Source: Octopus bimaculoides (taxonomy: Eukaryota). Taken from it: a stretch of 40,800 nt of DNA. The DNA lies in contig NC_068982.1 in assembly GCF_001194135.2 (NCBI RefSeq), positions 2,246,329 to 2,287,128 of the forward strand, given 5' to 3'. Each line of letters opens with the position of its first letter. Position 1 is the first letter of the stretch. Below, one piece after another: positions 2,300 through 23,514 of this stretch. The translations under genes and the position numbers were made by a program. The notes under the pieces were generated by a model, which saw only the letters and a program-made list of their open reading frames with translations, searched no databases and was not told where the DNA came from.

Positions 2300-2800
2300 A
2301 TGTGTTTGCATGTGTGTGTGTATGTATATGTATGTGTACATACATTATCTATCTATCCATCTATCTATATATCTACGTATATATCTATCTATACATATAT
2401 ATATATGAGTGTGTGTGTGTGTGTGTGTGTCTGTGTGTGTGTNNNNNNNNNNNNNNNNNNNNNNNNNNNNNNNNNNNNNNNNNNNNNNNNNNNNNNNNNN
2501 NNNNNNNNNNNNNNNNNNNNNNNNNNNNNNNNNNNNNNNNNNNNNNNNNNNNNNNNNNNNNNNNNNNNNNNNNNNNNNNNNNNNNNNNNNNNNNNNNNNN
2601 NNNNNNNNNNNNNNNNNNNNNNNNNNNNNNNNNNNNNNNNNNNNNNNNNNNNNNNNNNNNNNNNNNNNNNNNNNNNNNNNNNNNNNNNNNNNNNNNNNNN
2701 NNNNNNNNNNNNNNNNNNNNNNNNNNNNNNNNNNNNNNNNATATACATGTCTGTATGTGCGTGTGTGTTTGTGTGTGTATGTATGTGCGTATATGTGTGC
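2300..2800. repeat. Compound (TA)/(TATC)/(GT) microsatellite with N-gap 2443-2740
   Basis: Seen directly. Confidence 0.95.
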
Positions 2801-3864: not shown

Positions 3865-6135
3865 CCTGAGATAGGATCATCTAGAACACTAGACAGGAGG
3901 TGATCCAGTTTTGTTTTGAAGACACCTACATCCACACCATGCAGACCTGTCAGGGATTTTGGAAGGATATAGAAGAGATGTGATCACTTGAAACACAAAT
4001 TGTTGTGGTATCTGGTCCTGTATTTTGACGGTGACACTGTGAGTTTTCTGCTGTTTGTGTAACTCTTCGTGCAAAAGCTTTGTACAAGGGCTTCCAGGAT
4101 TTTCCAGATGTATATCACTGGATACCTTTCTTTCCTTTGTTCCAGGAAGAAGAGTTTTAATTCTTTCAGTCTTTCCCAGTAGCTGATACTTTGCATTGAG
4201 ACGATTTTCTTAGTGTAGCTTCATTGGATGTCTTCCAGTTCCACTGGTAATTTTATATTGTGTGATGACCATAGTTGGGAGCAGTAGTCCAAGCAGCTGA
4301 GAACATATATCCTCCAAAGGAGCATCAATGTCTCTTTTTCTCTTGTTTTGAAAGTTCAGAGGGATCCATCCAGCAAGCCGTTTGCATTTTAGTACGAAAT
4401 TGATAATATGCACTTAAAAAGATGCATCATTGCTCATATCAATGCTCAGGTCAAGCACTGATTTTGATTCAGGAATTGCACTTCCTTCCGTGCAAGTGTA
4501 TCCTGTCTGCATGTAGTTCAGTTTTGTGTGCTGATGGGGCATGGCTTGGAATTTCCCTGCAATAAACATTGCTGTCCTCAGCCCACCTGTATATTGCGTC
4601 CGATTCGCGTTGCAGATTCGCAATATTTCCAAGATTTTGTATTGCCTGAGAGACATTTGTGTTATCTGCAGAGCTAGCGAGGGTGGCTTTCTGAGCAGCT
4701 GAGGGTATATCTGAGTAGGTCACTGTAAATAGCAGTCGCTCTTAAACAGTGCCCTGTGGAACACCACTTTCTACTTGTGTTTCCTCTGTGGAAGCTCCAT
4801 TGGCCACCACTGCCTGATGTCTATCTTTTTGAAAGTCGTGAAGCCACTCTCCAAGTTCTCCGACGATGCCGAGATCACACAGCTTGTGGCATGTCATACC
4901 ATAATGGTCGACTTTATGAAAAGATTCTGCAAAGTCGAGATATATCACATTCACACTTGTGTTATTTATCAGCTGTTTTAATACCCAGTCGTAATGTCGT
5001 AAGAGATGTGTCAGGCACCTTCTACCTGATCGAAATTCATGCTGGGTATCGGTTACCATGTCTTTCGTCAAGGAATGCGTTTCGTCTCTTGCGGACTATT
5101 CGTTCCTTGACTTTGTTGATGTGTGAGGTCAGAAAGACAGGCTTATAAATTTTCGCATCTGCTCTGCATCCTCCTTTATGGACAGGGCATATTATCCCTT
5201 CCTTCAGTTTGTCTGGGAGCTTACCACTTGCAAGAAAGCTCTGAAAAAGGAACTGCAGTGCTATTCCAAGGGCTCGTTTGCACAATTTGAGAAGTATTGG
5301 GGGGAATCCAACAGGGCCAGCAGCTGCGGTTGTGCGAACCTCATCTATGAATAGTGTCACATCCTCTTTAATATTGCTGTAATAAACGTTCGCCTCTTTT
5401 GGTTGCAGCGGCCAACACTTCTACTGGTTTGATCACTTTTCTGTGCCCCAGAGGAGTAGGGAACATATTTTGGAACAGTTCATTCAATATTTCAGTTATC
5501 CTTATTGTGTTACCCGTGAGTGGGTCATCGGTTTTGAAAGAGAGACTCTATCTTGAGGCGTACTGAGGCTGTGTCTTTGTCAAAGTTAAAAAAGAAGCTT
5601 CAGACTTCAACTTGCTATTTTCTATAACTTAGGCCTCCTTATCTGTTCTTTCCTTTTCATGCGACTGATGCAGACTTTTCTCAATCTTCAAAAACACTCT
5701 CTTCAGGCGAGAAATTCCATTACTTTTGAGGTACTTGTTCAGGGGATTCGCAAATTTTCCTTTCCCTAAGTATTTTGTTTTTGTGTAAGTTCACCTAGTG
5801 CTCTGGGACTGATTTGCCACATATGGCTTGCATTATGGACATGAAATGTTTGTGTCTCATATCAATGTCTGGTGTAGAGAGACATTTAATCCCAATCCAG
5901 TTTGAAGATTTCTTTCTCAATCAACTTCCAGTTAGCTTTATGTAGCTTCAATCTGGAAAGATTTCGGGTACTTCGTATAGACTGTAGATCTGCAAGGACT
6001 TTTGGCCAATACAGAGAACAGCTCTATTATGTTGTGATCCGAGACTAACATCGTTGTCACTTTTACATTATGGAAAATGTCCATAATTTTTGTGAAGCAG
6101 AAATTCAGTATATTATTTGCCCTGGTTGGTTGCAG
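3865..6135 (-). mobile_element. CR1-like (CR1/L2 group) LINE ORF2 remnant: end of AP endonuclease, RT and 3' end; frameshifted
   Basis: Minus-strand pieces read in LINE order: PTRANNILNFCFT...SDHNIIE (APE C-terminus), AAGPVGFPPILLK, ICPVHKGG..ADAKIYKPVFLTSHINKVKERIV, VIYLDFAESFHKVDH, WLHDFQKDRHQAVV, SGVPQGTV, LASSADNTNV (decayed YADD), SYWERLKELKLFFLEQRKERY, GVFKTKLDHLLSSV. It has many stops and frameshifts. Confidence 0.92.
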
Positions 6136-6159
6136 TACAATGTGCGAATATATATGAAT

Positions 6160-6755
6160 ATGCATGTATAAATATATATATATANNNNNNNNNNNNNNNN
6201 NNNNNNNNNNNNNNNNNNNNNNNNNNNNNNNNNNNNNNNNNNNNNNNNNNNNNNNNNNNNNNNNNNNNNNNNNNNNNNNNNNNNNNNNNNNNNNNNNNNN
6301 NNNNNNNNNNNNNNNNNNNNNNNNNNNNNNNNNNNNNNNNNNNNNNNNNNNNNNNNNNNNNNNNNNNNNNNNNNNNNNNNNNNNNNNNNNNNNNNNNNNN
6401 NNNNNNNNNNNNNNNNNNNNNNNNNNNNNNNNNNNNNNNNNNNNNNNNNNNNNNNNNNNNNNNNNNNNNNNNNNNNNNNNNNNNNNNNNNNNNNNNNNNN
6501 NNNNNNNNNNNNNNNNNNNNNNNNNNNNNNNNNNNNNNNNNNNNNNNNNNNNNNNNNNNNNNNNNNNNNNNNNNNNNNNNNNNNNNNNNNNNNNNNNNNN
6601 NNNNNNNNNNNNNNNNNNNNNNNNNNNNNNNNNNNNNNNNNNNNNNNNNNNNNNNNNNNNNNNNNNNNNNNNNNNNNNNNNNNNNNNNNNNNNNNNNNNN
6701 NNNNNNNNNNNNNNNNNNNNNNNNNNNNNNNNNNNNNNNNNNNNNNNNNNNNNNN

Positions 6756-6787
<32 letters not shown>
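6160..6787. repeat. (AT)n tracts flanking N-gap 6185-6755
   Basis: Seen directly. Confidence 0.95.
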
Positions 6788-6791
<4 letters not shown>

Positions 6792-7254
6792 CGGTTCGTT
6801 ATGCCCGGTCGGGAAATCATCTTTGGATCCCTACCTATAAAGTTCTTAGCGCTATAGATCTATAGATGATTCATGACAGATGTTGGCCGGAATTACATAA
6901 CCTCTCTGGAGCTGGTGGTCGGAACACCCTATTACAGCCAGGATTTTTCGGCAAGTGTGTTTGAGGACCGCATCTCTTATGTGCCGGAGAGATAACTCCA
7001 TTTCGCGTAGAAATATTGTCCAACAATAGAAAATCTTTCCGGGACGTTTTGTTTAGCATCCTAGCTGAAAAAAATGTTTTCCTACTTTTAATTGTAGAGG
7101 AGTTCCGTGACAGCGGCCAACAATCCTAAGGAGTCAACTATGCCGCTCAAATCCTCCTCTTCGATCGGTCAAAACAGACTACCTGCTTAGTTCCCGCATT
7201 TTTTAAACCCATTATTAACAAACATCGAATTACCGAGCTGGTACTTAAGAAATG

Positions 7255-8290
7255 TAGAAAATCTCATGAGAAGAAGTATAAAAACAGCTTAGAGGATCGT
7301 GTAAGTTAACATTTTAGGCAGATGAGGCGCCCAGCAAGCCGCCACCCAGGTTCAAAATCTTTACTACTCAAGCATTGTACCGTTGTGCTAAACAGAGCTT
7401 GATAACCGATCTCGTCTTTTTAACGCTGAATAATAGGTTTTGAATTGTTTGGATATTTTCCTAAAAGTGCCGATTGAGTAGGTATTTTATGAATGAAGAA
7501 TATCTCGAATGTAAGAGAGCTGTGAAAACAGTTTAGAGGACCGTATGAATTGCCCTTACAGACAGATAAAATGTCCAAACACCACAGACAATAGAACACT
7601 GAACTTTTCACATTTTATTTTACGACACGTTACCATTGAACAAAACAACCCTGATTAGAGCTCCCGTCTTTATAAAACTAAAACGTTTGGAATGTCAAAA
7701 CATTTTTATACGCAAATATTTAATAGGTATTTTGGAAATAACGAAAAATCTCGAACAGATGTGAACACTTCTTAGAGGATCGTGTCATTTATCCTTATGG
7801 AGAGAAAAGTGACAGGCAAGCCGCTTCACAGATTCGAACTGTGCATCTCTCAAATTCCAGCTACACACAGTGTACCCATGAGCTAAAGGAACCCTGATAA
7901 AAGATCCCGATATTTTGAAAGCTAAAATAATAACTTTCAGAATACTAGAACACTTTTATAAGCATAACATCCAGGCATCGACAGAGTATGTATTTTTAGA
8001 ATTGCAGAAAATCTCGAACGCTTAAGAAGATATATGAAAAGAGCTTAGAAGATCGTGTAAATTACCCTTATAAACGGATAAAGCGCCAAATAAGCCAGTG
8101 CAGGGAATTCATCTCTGTAGCTCTCACATTGTACACGATTACACTGTAACATTGAGTTAAACAACTGCTGATAACAGGCGCAGCCTTTTTTAACGCTGAA
8201 TAATCGACGTTTGGAACGTTAGAACAAGTCTAAACACACATGAAAGCGCCGATTGAGTGAGTATTATAAAACTGAAGAAGATATGGAAAT
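7255..8290 (-). repeat. Diverged tandem array, 4 units of ~240-270 bp, each with a tRNA-like module
   Basis: The anchor ttaga(g/a)ga(t/c)cgt recurs at ~7289, 7533, 7772 and 8045, and aa(a/t)atctc at ~7258, 7499, 7745 and 8008. Units 1 and 4 share tttttaacgctgaataat (~7417, ~8186) and gccgattgagt (7469, 8248). A more decayed partial unit probably lies at ~7080-7255. Confidence 0.85.
7820..7892 (-). pseudogene. tRNA-like sequence (73 nt), probable tRNA pseudogene or tRNA-derived head; anticodon not assignable
   Basis: Minus strand: gttcctt TAGCTCATGG gtacac ... CACAG TTCGAAT CTGTG aagcggc. It has an A box, a perfect 5-bp/7-nt T-arm containing the B box, and an acceptor stem pairing at 6/7 positions (two G-U). 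TTTT follows a few nt downstream. The D and anticodon stems are degraded. Confidence 0.7.
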
Positions 8291-8720
8291 TGTTCATACT
8301 TTATTTTATGTGGTGGATGAAGGGCAAAGTTTAAATACAAAAGCATACGCGCACACAAGCAGGTATATGAACTTACACCATAAGATTAGGAAGAAAGGTC
8401 GCCACGATCGTGATTTTGATAACCCGCCGCTAATAACCATAATGATATTTCTCTGTGAATTTCACCGGTAGGCCAGCAATTACTAGGGATTTCGGCTAGG
8501 TATACTCGAGATTGCTCCAATCTGGCCAGCTCCAAGGAAAACTAAGCTAAGATCATTAGATTCCTTGGAAGAAAGCAGCGAAGGTGTACGAAAACAAGGA
8601 GGGAAAAAAACGGAGAAGTTTACACAAATACAAATAACAGGACATAACAACAGGTGTCTTTCGACTAAGGACGAATTAAATTAAGCTGGCGTGTGTGGGA
8701 ATAAAGCGTTACGGCAGGGA

Positions 8721-8722
<2 letters not shown>

Positions 8723-8752
<30 letters not shown>

Positions 8753-8789
8753 NNNNNNNNNNNNNNNNNNNNNNNNNNNNNNNNNNNNN

Positions 8790-8818
<29 letters not shown>
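8723..8818. repeat. (TA)n - N-gap 8753-8789 - (GA)n
   Basis: Seen directly. Confidence 0.95.
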
Positions 8819-8822
<4 letters not shown>

Positions 8823-9352
8823 AGCTATATTTGCAAATTAAAGAAAATCGCTCACTAAATAATATAGACTTCATGTTTATTGAGAATCTTTTGGATATTC
8901 ACGATAATACCATTGGGAATTTGAAGCACTTAAGATACTTCCAGTCGATCAGACAATATTGATGTAAAAAGTTGAAGCTTAGTCTGCGACGCAGTAGTTG
9001 GATACTTCATACTTGAGGCAGTGAAAATATGATATTTGAAGTGAATTGAATTATATATATATGAAAATAGACTGTGTAAGGCAGCACGAGTTTTTGATGG
9101 TAATTTCCAATATCTGCGAATACATCTGCTTTGTCTTTGTGTATAGACAGTCATAGTTAGAATTAACCTATAATTGGATCTATGAATTATGTTTCACATA
9201 ATCTGAAGAACATACATTCTTTTGTAGAAAGACTGTAAAAAAAAAAGACTGTATATTAAGGAATAGTTTATAATAGAGTAAAGAGTAGAGCATCGAAAGT
9301 TCAATTGAATTATCAGCAACACGGCGCTACTTTATACGTCTCACATAATTAA

Positions 9353-9580
9353 GGCAACGAGCTGACGGAATGGAATCGTGACCACGGCGAGAGAAATGCT
9401 TAGCGGCATTTCGTCCGTCCTTACGTTCTGAGTTCTAATCCTGCAGTGGTCGACTTTGCCTTTCATCCCTTCGGAATCTATCAAAAGAAACACCAGCTGA
9501 GCATCGGTGTTGATGTAAACGACTTATGACTTATTCACCACCCCTTGAAATTGTAGGCTTTGTGTCAATATTTGAAACTA
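9353..9580 (+). mobile_element. SINE family A, diverged
   Basis: gaaatgcttagcggcatttcgtccgtccttacgttctgagttct...gtcgactttgcctttcatccc. Confidence 0.9.
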
Positions 9581-9597
9581 TTATAATTACTATTAAT

Positions 9598-9818
9598 GCG
9601 TCGAGCGGGCAGAATCGTTAACATGCCGGCCTTAATGCTTGGCAGCATTTCTTCCGTCTTTACGTCTTTACGTTCTGAATTCAAATTCCACCGAGGTCGA
9701 CTTTGACTTTCACCCCCTCGAGGTCGATAAAATTAGTACCGGTTGAGCACTGCGGCCAATGCAATCAACTTACCCCTCCTCCCAAATTGCTGGCCTTCTG
9801 ACAAAATTTGAAAACATT
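9598..9818 (+). mobile_element. SINE family A, directly after the previous copy
   Basis: gggcagaatcgttaacatgccgg...ccgaggtcgactttgactttcacccc..gaggtcgataaaattagtacc. It carries an internal tctttacg duplication. Confidence 0.9.
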
Positions 9819-10571
9819 ATGCATCATAAACCTGGGGCACATCCGTAATTGTGGTTGTTGGTTGTTAATGGGAAATACTAGCAGAAGCTTTTTCACTTAG
9901 AATGGGTGATTGCTACTATCGACTCCTCCCTTCAATTATAAGCCTGCAAAAACCACTGCATGAAGCGCAAGATAATAATATGAATTTGAGACATCTTTAA
10001 ATTCAAACATCTGTTCTTTGAGAGTGAATAATTTCCAGTAAAATGCACGGGATTAAGATGTTAAAGCCATAAATTACAGATATTTGCCCAAATACGAAAT
10101 AAAAAAAAATCTTTTGCAGAAGGCTACAAAAACCATGCATAAACGACTAATCTTTTGATGAATGTAATGCTATCTGGTCTGATGGAAGTAAAACGACTCA
10201 AAACAACTACATATACATATATAATTTACTCTCAAAATGCATTGCTTTTAATCGCTGGATGCAAGAGGGAAAAAACGTTTGTAGCAGACTAAAATGTTGT
10301 CTACACACCGCGAGGCTTACGTATCTGTAAATCCTTGCGAACAGAAATAACTTGTACTTGCAGCAAAGCAAGCTGCATCAAATTGCATCAACATGTTTAA
10401 TCGTTAGCCGAATTAAATGATATAAATTATAACGATTTCTCACAATACGATAAGTGTGTGGTTTTCTTAGTGGAATTGTGGCATAAAACGCAGTGAAATT
10501 GTAGCCTGGAATCATACAGATAAATGAATACATTATATGATATATCTGAATGTTAAATAGCGTTAAAATAT

Positions 10572-10784
10572 CTTTTTCTAATCTAGGTACAAGGCCAAAG
10601 ATTTTTGGGGAGGGAGCCAGTCAATTAGATCGACCACAGTACTCAACTGGTACGTAATTTATCGACCCCGAAAGGATGAAATACAAAGTCGAGCTCGGCG
10701 GTATTTGAACTCAAAACGTAAAGATAAACAAAATAGCACTAAGCATTTTGCCCAGCGGGCTAACGTTTCTGCCAGCTCGCTGCC
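10572..10784 (-). mobile_element. Full-length SINE family A with 9-bp TSD
   Basis: Complete reverse-complement copy, flanked by ttaaaatat at 10563-10571 and 10785-10793. Confidence 0.93.
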
Positions 10785-10861
10785 TTAAAATATTTAAAGT
10801 ACCACCATGTCATAGATGGGGAACGCGTAAATGTGTAGCATAAGTGGGATTATAAAATCCT

Positions 10862-14822: not shown

Positions 14823-15030
14823 GGCGGCGAACTGGCAGAATCATTAGTAGCCAGGACGAAATGCTTTGCGGTATTTCGCCAGTCGCTACGTTCTGAGTTC
14901 AAATTCCACCGAGGTCGACCATGCCTTTCATCCTTTCGGGGTCGGTAAAATAAGTACCAGTAGAGTGCTGGATTAGATTTAATCGACTGGACCCCTCCCC
15001 CAAAATGTCAGTCCTTGTGCCTATAGCAGA
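14823..15030 (+). mobile_element. Full-length SINE family A
   Basis: ggcggcgaactggcagaatcattag...gagttcaaattccaccgaggtcgaccatgcctttcatcctttcggggtcggtaaaataagtaccag...ccttgtgcctatag. Confidence 0.93.
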
Positions 15031-15097: not shown

Positions 15098-15346
15098 NNN
15101 NNNNNNNNNNNNNNNNNNNNNNNNNNNNNNNNNNNNNNNNNNNNNNNNNNNNNNNNNNNNNNNNNNNNNNNNNNNNNNNNNNNNNNNNNNNNNNNNNNNN
15201 NNNNNNNNNNNNNNNNNNNNNNNNNNNNNNNNNNNNNNNNNNNNNNNNNNNNNNNNNNNNNNNNNNNNNNNNNNNNNNNNNNNNNNNNNNNNNNNNNNNN
15301 NNNNNNNNNNNNNNNNNNNNNNNNNNNNNNNNNNNNNNNNNNNNNN
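15098..15346. other. Assembly gap (N run)
   Basis: N run; its right edge falls inside a SINE. Confidence 0.99.
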
Positions 15347-16817: not shown

Positions 16818-17037
16818 ATTATTCTTTTCTACTCCAGGCACAAGGCCCGAAATTTGTTTAGGAGGGGTGCCAGTCGATTACATTAACGCCAGTACACACC
16901 TGGTACTTAATTTATCAACCCCAAAAGGATGAAAGGCAAAGTCGATCTCGGCGGAATTTGAACTCAGAACGTAAAGAAAGACGAAATACCGCTCAGCATT
17001 TCATCCATCGTGTTCACGATTCTGCCTGCTTGCCGCC
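16818..17037 (-). mobile_element. Full-length SINE family A
   Basis: aggcacaaggcccgaaattt...aaggatgaaaggcaaagtcgatctcggcggaatttgaactcagaacg...gattctgcctgcttgccgcc. Confidence 0.93.
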
Positions 17038-18029
17038 TTAGTTATAATAAATATTGAATCTCTGCTTATTACTTCAAGCCAGCGCAGTTTGATCTCCTCT
17101 AAGTTTTGTCTATGAAGCCTAAAATATGACAGGGGTTATCATCCTTAAACCCTAAACTTGCAATGAATGTAATTCTAATTGATGGAGAACAATAAATCAT
17201 ATCTTTAAAATATTTTTCCAGAAAGTCAAATTGGTCAAAAGGTCAGGGTATATCAGTATAACATAGTTTATATGAAATAATACATCTGAGAGCGGTATTA
17301 GTTTGTGACAAGGCTTAGTAGACACGTGGACAAGTATCTTCTATATCAGCATTGATATCTTGCACGATTCTCATTGGAATTTATTGTTCTAATTTAAAGT
17401 AATGCTGATGTGACAAAGTCTACACCGAATTGCCTTTCAGACAACGGGATGCCTAAAATTATGGAGCAAATCATATAAGCTCTTTAAAGAAAACCTTTGA
17501 CAATTTCCATTCAGTTGAACTCATTGGCAGAGGTAAACTGCTTTACAAAATGTAATCAAAGCTAAAACGAGGAAAATCAATCTACGGAACTAGAGAATAT
17601 ATATTTACGAAAACTATTCTAATTTGAATTTACTTTCAGAATTCAATTATAACATTTAGTAATTTATTTATTATAAATGCTAATAGAGTAGCATAGCTGG
17701 AAATAGTTGTATTTCATGAGGATATGAGTTCATATATCTTTAGAATGATCTGGGAATGAATATCAGGGAAAAAACCTGATATCTAATATTATTCCCGAAA
17801 AGTCAGTTAAATCTGAGATGTGTCTGAAATTCTCTTGTGCTATATAAGCTCTCAAACCGATTGCATTTGAATACAGGCTGATAGCACTACCTTGACAAAA
17901 TTAAACATGGTTTTGTATTCTTAACAGGGTTTTAGCATCCATGTAGAAAAACATAATTTAAGCTTGGAAAAACCATGTGCGAAATCCTAGAATTTTGACA
18001 CTTTTGTGAATTCAGGTATTATACGCAAG

Positions 18030-21266: not shown

Positions 21267-21307
21267 NNNNNNNNNNNNNNNNNNNNNNNNNNNNNNNNNN
21301 NNNNCAC

Positions 21308-23047: not shown

Positions 23048-23514
23048 NNNNNNNNNNNNNNNNNNNNNNNNNNNNNNNNNNNNNNNNNNNNNNNNNNNNN
23101 NNNNNNNNNNNNNNNNNNNNNNNNNNNNNNNNNNNNNNNNNNNNNNNNNNNNNNNNNNNNNNNNNNNNNNNNNNNNNNNNNNNNNNNNNNNNNNNNNNNN
23201 NNNNNNNNNNNNNNNNNNNNNNNNNNNNNNNNNNNNNNNNNNNNNNNNNNNNNNNNNNNNNNNNNNNNNNNNNNNNNNNNNNNNNNNNNNNNNNNNNNNN
23301 NNNNNNNNNNNNNNNNNNNNNNNNNNNNNNNNNNNNNNNNNNNNNNNNNNNNNNNNNNNNNNNNNNNNNNNNNNNNNNNNNNNNNNNNNNNNNNNNNNNN
23401 NNNNNNNNNNNNNNNNNNNNNNNNNNNNNNNNNNNNNNNNNNNNNNNNNNNNNNNNNNNNNNNNNNNNNNNNNNNNNNNNNNNNNNNNNNNNNNNNNNNN
23501 NNNNNNNNNNNNNN

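What the first reader, a model, noticed from the sequence alone, without database searches (positions are those of the whole stretch)
7255..8290. Cryptic ~250-bp tandem array of tRNA-like Pol III units
Seen: four diverged tandem units (periods about 240, 245, 265 and 270 bp) that no ORF or microsatellite explains. On the minus strand each keeps an A-box-like motif at the same position (tagcacaacggta, ttgttcaatggta, tagctcatgggta, taactcaatgtta) and a T-arm/B-box remnant ~45 nt downstream. Unit 3 (7820-7892) is exactly tRNA-sized, with a perfect CACAG-TTCGAAT-CTGTG T-arm, a 6/7 acceptor stem and TTTT just 3'. Its head differs from all three SINE families in the window. Inference: it is either a fossil tandem tRNA gene cluster or a tRNA-derived satellite or tandem small-RNA family. 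Arrays of A/B boxes can bind TFIIIC and act as insulators or produce small Pol III transcripts.
Basis: partly seen in the sequence, partly recalled or inferred. Interest (0 to 1): 0.75.

Follow-up and report, generated by a model that had tools for sequence, protein, structure and literature searches.

The report
Decayed tandem repeat with tRNA relic
A stretch of octopus DNA holds four old, badly eroded head-to-tail copies of a ~250-bp segment that once carried a tRNA-like piece; it looks like ordinary decaying repeat DNA, not a working gene family.

Summary
Window 7240-8288 contains 4.1 head-to-tail units of 241, 247, 262 and 268 bp. Pairwise identity is 61-67%, against about 40% for shuffled units, and TRF misses the array.

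That hit is 7819-7892 on the minus strand, full length, 16.9 bits, E about 0.005. The consensus of the four units has near-canonical A and B boxes 45 nt apart. So the founder unit very probably carried a tRNA-derived module.

Nothing points to present function. ARAGORN and Rfam call no tRNA. Units 1, 2 and 4 score nothing. The tRNA-like segment is the least conserved part of the unit. The cloverleaf pairs are not kept above controls. Unit 3 does not fold as a cloverleaf.

A comparable tRNA-like relic scores 22.5 bits in 22 kb of unrelated Octopus sinensis DNA, so such relics are common there. No second copy of the unit turned up in the window, in that locus or in metagenomes.

Verdict: an old, neutrally decaying local tandem duplication of a segment holding a tRNA pseudogene or SINE-type head. 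This kind is already known. No octopus genome, repeat library or sequencing reads could be searched.

The parts
7240..8288 (-). The whole cryptic tandem array: 4 full units plus about 30 nt of partial unit shared between the two edges.
   Evidence: nhmmer finds no further unit in the flanks 6756-7257 or 8276-8752
7258..7498 (-). Unit 1 (241 bp). It has a 13-nt deletion in the anticodon-arm region of the tRNA-like segment (7397-7337).
7499..7745 (-). Unit 2 (247 bp). Its degenerate tRNA-like segment lies at 7649-7580.
7746..8007 (-). Unit 3 (262 bp), the unit that carries the best-kept tRNA-like module.
8008..8275 (-). Unit 4 (268 bp). Its degenerate tRNA-like segment lies at 8166-8093.
7819..7892 (-). 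tRNA-like relic of unit 3. It matches the cloverleaf model over its full length, with the T arm and acceptor stem kept and the D and anticodon stems broken.
   Evidence: R1 covariance model 16.9 bits, E 0.0055 over the window and 0.00015 over 1.1 kb; ARAGORN calls it only at an 80% threshold
7875..7885 (-). A-box-like motif of unit 3, TAGCTCATGGG, with 2 mismatches to TRGCNNAGTGG.
7830..7840 (-). B-box-like motif of unit 3, AGTTCGAATCT, with 2 mismatches to GGTTCGANNCC. It starts 45 nt after the A box.
7805..7808 (-). TTTT run 11 nt downstream of the tRNA-like element, a possible Pol III terminator remnant.
   Evidence: read directly from the sequence

Best explanation
This is a fossil. A genomic segment of about 250-265 bp contained a tRNA-derived element with canonical A and B boxes. 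That element was either a tRNA pseudogene or the tRNA-related head of a short retroposon. The segment was duplicated in tandem about four times at this spot, by unequal crossing-over or replication slippage. Since then all copies have decayed neutrally. Pairwise distance between units is about 0.45-0.55 substitutions per site, so each unit has drifted roughly 0.23-0.27 from the founder. By chance unit 3 kept its T arm and acceptor pairing, while the other units lost them to substitutions and deletions. The array has no sequence-specific function today. At most, the unit-3 B box could still bind TFIIIC weakly.

Shown: the tandem structure, the star-like divergence, the tRNA-model hit in unit 3, and the absence of structural or sequence constraint. 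Inferred: the duplication mechanism, the age, and the nature of the founder.
For: - Tandem structure and equal divergence of all unit pairs, 61-67%.
- The top window-wide hit of tRNA model R1 lies on 7819-7892(-): 16.9 bits, E 0.0055, model positions 1-73. The next hit scores 7.5 bits.
- The unit consensus carries TAGCTCAATGG ... AGTTCGAATCT at distance 45, with 1 and 2 mismatches. Scaling the shuffle rate of about 1.5 per window to 264 nt gives roughly 0.01 expected by chance.
- The D-loop invariants T8, A14, R15, G18, G19 and A21 are present in units 1 and 2 and in the consensus (alignment).
- All four units keep part of the complementary stem triplets either side of the T loop: CAG...CTG in units 2-4, AAG...CTG in unit 1.
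- Signs of decay and lack of constraint: no tRNA from ARAGORN or Rfam; no R1 hit in units 1, 2 or 4; the tRNA-like segment is the least conserved part; cloverleaf pairing is 61.8%, reached by 178 of 500 shuffles; no cloverleaf fold and z-scores from -1.4 to +1.6.
- tRNA-like relics of this strength are ordinary in octopus DNA. An unrelated SINE head in 22 kb of O. sinensis scores 22.5 bits.
Against: - The E-value of the home-made model is rough, possibly off five-fold, and rests on one unit.
- A sequence-only tRNA profile gives the consensus just 3.7 and 0.3 bits.
- With four old copies the founder sequence cannot be reconstructed with confidence.
- Whether the unit is single-locus or belongs to a dispersed family was not testable.
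- Conserved spacer blocks such as TACACGATCCTCTAAG are unexplained, though they need be nothing more than slow spots.
Confidence: 0.6

Rival explanations
1. The array is one copy of a dispersed repeat. It could be the internal tandem-repeat core of a non-autonomous mobile element, as in Helitron- or MITE-borne arrays of molluscs. It could also be one locus of a SINE-derived satellite. On this reading the four units arrived, or were amplified, as part of a family rather than by a private local duplication.
For: Short tandem arrays of tRNA-derived SINEs (2-15 units) are reported in bivalves (PMC11481361). SINE-derived satellites are reported in squamates (PMC10702118). A Nin-SINE-derived satellite is reported in a limpet (PMC11121367). 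Two same-strand copies of the common SINE lie next to each other at 9395-9584 and 9634-9820, so tandem-like SINE arrangements do occur in this genome.
Against: No other copy of the unit was found in the 40.8-kb window, in 22 kb of O. sinensis or in JGI metagenomes. No terminal inverted repeat or shared flank was seen. Judged by the phase of the array edges, the tRNA-like module lies about 100 nt inside the unit, not at its 5' end, and there is no A-rich or simple-repeat tail. So the unit is not simply 'SINE plus target-site duplication'.
Confidence: 0.2
2. The tRNA resemblance is chance. The array is a tandem duplication of anonymous DNA with no tRNA ancestry.
For: A/B-box pairs at no more than 2 mismatches each occur 5 times in the window against about 1.5 in shuffles, so one site alone is weak evidence. 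ARAGORN at relaxed settings gives 22 calls in the window. Rfam's own tRNA model shows nothing. The sequence-only profile is not significant.
Against: The best full-length hit of an independent structure-aware model across 81.6 kb of both strands falls exactly on this element, 9 bits above the runner-up. The consensus of the four units is closer to the canonical A box than unit 3 itself. Decay from a tRNA-like founder predicts this pattern and chance does not.
Confidence: 0.1
3. The array is a working set of Pol III elements. On this reading it is a tandem family of tRNA-like small-RNA genes, or a cluster of TFIIIC-binding sites that acts as a chromatin boundary.
For: Unit 3 has A- and B-box-like motifs at tRNA spacing and a TTTT run 11 nt downstream. 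Units 2 and 4 also have T runs after the module.
Against: Only one of the four units has a usable B box. The tRNA-like segment is the least conserved part. There is no structural conservation, no stable fold and no hit to any of 4227 Rfam families.
Confidence: 0.05
4. The units are promoter monomers of the 5' untranslated region of the neighbouring LINE, in the manner of mouse L1 monomers.
For: A degenerate CR1/jockey-like LINE lies on the same (minus) strand at about 3870-6140, directly downstream of the array in that orientation. Its reverse transcriptase hits O. sinensis and O. bimaculoides proteins and gives a weak RVT_1 match.
Against: The LINE copy ends within the last part of its endonuclease at about 6140. 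That end abuts an (AT)n microsatellite present on both sides of the assembly gap 6185-6755. A further 490 nt with no coding or repeat similarity separates the gap from the array. The O. sinensis paralogue has no unit upstream, but it is 5'-truncated, so this is weak evidence.
Confidence: 0.05

Closest known systems
Tandem-like arrays of tRNA-derived SINEs in molluscs (bivalves; PMC11481361) and SINE-derived satellites (squamates, PMC10702118; limpet PcH-Sat, PMC11121367)
   Same: Head-to-tail copies of a roughly 200-300-bp unit that contains a tRNA-related segment with A and B boxes. Arrays are short (2-15 units), lie in non-coding DNA and occur in a mollusc.
   Different: No parent SINE family could be identified. 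The tRNA-like part is not at the 5' end of the unit as phased by the array edges, and no SINE tail is visible. The copies are far more diverged (61-67%) than the arrays described there. Copy number elsewhere is unknown.
Tandemly repeated tRNA gene clusters, for example in Xenopus, zebrafish, Entamoeba and Arabidopsis (from general knowledge, not tested here)
   Same: The repeat unit is one tRNA-sized element with a short trailer and T run, followed by a spacer of about 170 nt.
   Different: No unit is a callable tRNA. Even the inferred founder has a poor acceptor stem and D stem in the consensus. No isotype can be assigned.
tRNA pseudogenes, or solitary tRNA-related SINE heads, scattered through octopus DNA
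   Same: A similar covariance-model score: 16.9 bits here and 22.5 bits for an unrelated SINE head in O. sinensis.
   Different: Here the relic sits inside a locally duplicated unit.
Mouse L1-type 5' UTR monomer arrays
   Same: Tandem units of about 200-270 bp lying upstream of a LINE on the same strand.
   Different: There is no continuity with the LINE, whose 5' end is truncated or separated by a microsatellite, an assembly gap and 490 nt of unrelated DNA.

Membership tests
functional tRNA gene | Cloverleaf recognised by tRNA detectors or covariance models at gene-level scores | tested here: not met
   ARAGORN finds 0 genes. Rfam shows no tRNA match at E <= 10. The custom model R1 gives only 16.9 bits for unit 3 and nothing for units 1, 2 and 4. 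The minimum-energy fold is not a cloverleaf.
functional tRNA gene | Internal A and B box promoter at canonical spacing, followed by a T-run terminator | tested here: inconclusive
   Unit 3 has 2 and 2 mismatches, a distance of 45 nt and TTTT 11 nt downstream. Units 1, 2 and 4 have 2-3 and 4 mismatches.
tRNA-derived SINE | tRNA-related head at the 5' end of the element | tested here: inconclusive
   A tRNA-related module is present. By the phase of the array edges it lies about 100 nt inside the unit.
tRNA-derived SINE | Body followed by an A-rich, simple-repeat or LINE-derived tail | tested here: not met
   No A-rich or simple-repeat tail appears in the consensus. The profile search of the window, which includes the neighbouring LINE's 3' end, gave no significant hit outside the array.
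tRNA-derived SINE | Many dispersed copies flanked by target-site duplications | not testable with these tools
   There are no other copies in the 40.8-kb window, in 22 kb of O. sinensis or in metagenomes. No cephalopod genome or repeat library was searchable.
satellite DNA / SINE-derived satellite | Head-to-tail tandem monomers | tested here: met
   4.1 units.
satellite DNA / SINE-derived satellite | Long arrays or many loci with homogenised monomers | tested here: not met
   At this locus there are only 4.1 units at 61-67% identity, with no sign of homogenisation. Other loci are not testable.
LINE 5' UTR monomer array | Monomers contiguous with the 5' end of a full-length LINE and present in other copies of the family | tested here: inconclusive
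   The array lies on the same strand and next to the LINE, but is separated from it by a microsatellite, an assembly gap and 490 nt. The only paralogue fetched is 5'-truncated.
hammerhead retrozyme-type tandem repeats | A self-cleaving ribozyme motif in each unit | tested here: not met
   No hammerhead or other ribozyme family appears at E <= 10 in 6500-9000.

The most novel reading that the evidence does not exclude
The array is the eroded local member of an octopus-specific family of tandemly arranged, Pol III-transcribed tRNA-like small-RNA genes, or of TFIIIC-bound boundary elements. On this reading younger, active arrays exist elsewhere in the genome.
Probability: 0.04. Interest if true: 0.5.

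Novelty: new member of a known kind. Interest (0 to 1): 0.15.

Why it matters
It matters little. It adds one example from a cephalopod to a known pattern, in which tRNA-derived elements are caught up in short tandem duplications and may seed satellites. It would matter more only if genome-wide searches found younger arrays that are transcribed or bound by TFIIIC. As a practical point, such old arrays escape TRF and standard tRNA finders, so they go unmasked and can look like novel features.

Tried and rejected
- TRF at minimum score 30 misses the array.
- Rfam at E <= 10 on the region and on the whole window gives no tRNA, ribozyme or other credible family. The miRNA 'hits' are microsatellites.
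- ARAGORN at relaxed thresholds is too noisy to use, with 22 calls in the window.
- A sequence-only tRNA HMM is not sensitive enough.
- Searches for relatives all failed:
  - nhmmer on the window and on the O. sinensis locus L001;
  - two metagenome pattern scans, which gave 0 hits and then 51 chance 16-mer hits;
  - a protein search with the translated consensus, which found nothing;
  - exact look-ups of 12 window ORFs (10 from the array contig, 2 of them looked up twice), none on record;
  - a literature search for unit motifs, which found nothing relevant.
- A possible fifth unit left of 7258 was rejected. The local alignment scored 35 against a shuffle maximum of 33, and nhmmer found nothing.
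- A hunt for an exon that could lead to the orthologous locus was dropped. The six-frame segments show only transposon remnants.
- The first Pfam call on typed-in RT fragments returned nothing. The same region given as a DNA reference gave a weak RVT_1 match.

Full report
**Setting.** The window is octopus DNA. A degenerate LINE reverse transcriptase at about 3870-5420 on the minus strand finds Octopus sinensis and O. bimaculoides 'jockey-like' proteins at 56-61% identity. The assembly has eight runs of N. Two of them, 6185-6755 and 8753-8789, bracket a 2-kb contig that holds the finding.

**Is the array real?** Yes.
- The repeat finder reports direct-repeat families with four in-register copies spaced 244, 239 and 273 bp, and several three-copy families.
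- A lag profile of 15-mers with at least 11 matches peaks at 239-274 bp and at twice that distance, above 20 shuffles.
- I cut the units at 7258-7498, 7499-7745, 7746-8007 and 8008-8275 and aligned them with MAFFT. Every pair is 61-67% identical, while shuffled units aligned the same way give 39-45%.
- A sensitive self-BLAST puts the edges at about 7240 and 8288, giving 4.1 units. It also shows no other multi-unit cryptic array in the window.
- nhmmer with the unit profile finds no further unit in either flank. A marginal alignment left of 7258 does not exceed shuffles convincingly.
- TRF misses the array because the copies are too diverged.
- All pairs are about equally distant, so the tree is star-like. 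Jukes-Cantor distance between units is about 0.45-0.55, or roughly a quarter substitution per site per lineage. The array is old. The age itself is inference.

**Is it tRNA-like?** Partly.
- Standard detectors say no. ARAGORN finds no tRNA in the window. Rfam gives no tRNA match at E <= 10 in 6500-9000 or in the whole window. That Rfam threshold is shared among 4227 families, so a weak match to one family could be hidden.
- I therefore built a tRNA-only covariance model (R1). It uses 14 annotated type-I tRNAs of E. coli K-12 with the cloverleaf supplied. I ran it without filters over both strands of the window.
- Its best hit is 7819-7892 on the minus strand: model positions 1-73, 16.9 bits, E 0.0055. 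The next hit has 7.5 bits and E 4.
- In that alignment unit 3 keeps T8, A14, G18, A21, U33, a purine at 37, G53, T54, T55, C56, R57, A58, Y60 and C61. It also has a perfect 5-bp T stem and 6 of 7 acceptor pairs, two of them G-U. The D and anticodon stems are broken.
- TTTT follows 11 nt downstream, at 7808-7805.
- Units 1, 2 and 4 give no hit even when only 7200-8300 is searched.

**What was the founder like?**
- The majority consensus of the four units reads TAGCTCAATGG ... AGTTCGAATCT with the boxes 45 nt apart. That is 1 and 2 mismatches to TRGCNNAGTGG and GGTTCGANNCC.
- Pairs with no more than 2 mismatches each occur about 1.5 times per shuffled window, so about 0.01 are expected in 264 nt.
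- The consensus A box is closer to the canon than unit 3's own. Units 1 and 2 keep the D-loop invariants A14, R15, G18, G19 and A21.
- All four units keep part of the complementary stem triplets either side of the T loop. Units 2, 3 and 4 read CAG...CTG and unit 1 reads AAG...CTG.
- Decay from a tRNA-derived founder predicts this pattern and chance does not.
- The consensus acceptor and D stems pair poorly. So the founder was probably already a pseudogene or a SINE-type head rather than a working tRNA gene. With four old copies this cannot be settled.

**Is there any sign of function?** No.
- The tRNA-like segment is the least conserved part of the unit, at 54-66% identity against 60-77% in the spacers.
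- With the cloverleaf laid on the four-unit alignment, 61.8% of cells pair. This is reached by 178 of 500 shuffles, with no meaningful covariation.
- The unit-3 RNA folds into a long hairpin rather than a cloverleaf, with z = -1.4. The homologous segments of the other units have z from -0.4 to +1.6.
- Only unit 3 has a B box that could plausibly bind TFIIIC.

**How unusual is a 17-bit tRNA-like relic in octopus DNA?** Not very. In the only other octopus sequence I could fetch, 22 kb of O. sinensis around a paralogous LINE, R1 finds a 22.5-bit hit. It is the head of an unrelated SINE. The abundant SINE family of the window, with copies at 10574-10787, 14823-15023, 16825-17040 and 30105-30270 among others, is unrelated to the unit and does not hit R1.

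**Is the unit part of a family?** I could not tell.
- No other copy exists in the window or in the O. sinensis locus.
- Two pattern scans of JGI metagenomes gave nothing and then 51 chance 16-mer hits, which nhmmer rejected.
- A protein-space search with the translated consensus found nothing.
- Exact look-ups of ORFs from the window are not on record.
- No cephalopod genome, Dfam, Repbase or SINEBase could be searched.
- The absence of copies from about 63 kb only excludes a hyper-abundant family.

**Neighbouring LINE.** A CR1/jockey-like LINE lies on the same strand just downstream of the array in minus orientation. This raised the idea of 5' UTR promoter monomers. The copy stops inside the C-terminal end of its endonuclease, where an 'SDH' motif lies near 6040-6075, at about 6140. 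There it meets an (AT)n microsatellite that also lies on the far side of the gap. A further 490 nt without coding or repeat similarity separates the gap from the array. The O. sinensis paralogue is 5'-truncated and so uninformative. I rate this idea low.

**Comparison with known kinds.**
- Short tandem arrays of tRNA-derived SINEs (2-15 units, including inside introns) are described in bivalves, with unequal recombination between target-site duplications proposed as the cause (PMC11481361).
- SINE-derived satellites are described in squamates (PMC10702118) and in a limpet (PMC11121367).
- Tandem tRNA gene clusters are known in several eukaryotes (general knowledge, not tested here).
- The present array works like none of these in any active sense. 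It resembles a dead example of the first or the last.
- It fails or cannot be tested on the defining features of a SINE: the head is not at the 5' end, no tail is visible and no dispersed copies were found. It also fails those of a satellite, which needs long or many arrays and homogenised monomers.

**Verdict.** The best explanation is an old local tandem duplication of a segment that held a tRNA-derived relic and has since decayed neutrally (confidence about 0.6). The feature is a new member of a known kind and of low interest.

Noticed in passing
window 3870-6140 (minus strand): A degenerate CR1/jockey-like LINE with several frameshifts and stops. The RT piece hits Octopus sinensis LOC115215137 and an O. 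bimaculoides jockey-like protein at 56% identity, and Pfam RVT_1 weakly. An endonuclease C-terminal 'SDH' motif lies near 6040-6075. The copy ends in an (AT)n microsatellite at the assembly gap.
   Followed up: partly
window 25877-27031 (plus strand): A mariner/Mos1-type transposase remnant: Pfam HTH_48 (E 9e-17) at 25877-26203 and Transposase_1 (E 2e-9) at 26567-27028.
   Followed up: partly
window 9395-9584 and 9634-9820: Two same-strand copies of the window's common tRNA-derived SINE lie side by side, offset 239 bp and about 68% identical. This is a 'tandem-like SINE structure' of the kind described in bivalves, only 1.1 kb from the array.
   Followed up: no
window 10574-10787, 14823-15023, 16825-17040, 30105-30270 and fragments elsewhere: An abundant SINE family of about 200 bp, 76-82% identical between copies. 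Its head is not detected by Rfam, ARAGORN at default settings or the custom tRNA model.
   Followed up: partly
window 2443-2740, 6185-6755, 8753-8789, 15098-15346, 21267-21304, 23048-23514, 30493-30729, 31865-32698: Eight runs of N totalling 2731 bases, most of them bordered by dinucleotide microsatellites. This is a draft scaffold, and the gap sizes are probably estimates.
   Followed up: no
window 25889-25943 (minus strand): The second-best tRNA-like signal in the window, ATGGCCTAGTGGGTAGAGCAGCAGACT. R1 gives 7.5 bits and the tRNA sequence profile gives E 0.044. It is probably another SINE head or tRNA relic, at the start of the mariner remnant.
   Followed up: no
L001 15507-15587 (minus strand), O. 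sinensis CM016866.1: A SINE head scoring 22.5 bits with the custom tRNA model, followed by a body reading ...TGTGTCCTGGAGCAAGGCAC... It is unrelated to the unit studied here.
   Followed up: partly
window 7245-7265, 7486-7506, 7995-8015, 8268-8288: The junction motif between units, (T)TTAGAAnTGnAGAAAATCTC, is present at both outer edges of the array as well as between units. The layout can be written (R-X)4-R, as expected if unequal exchange between short direct repeats made the array. This is suggestive only.
   Followed up: partly
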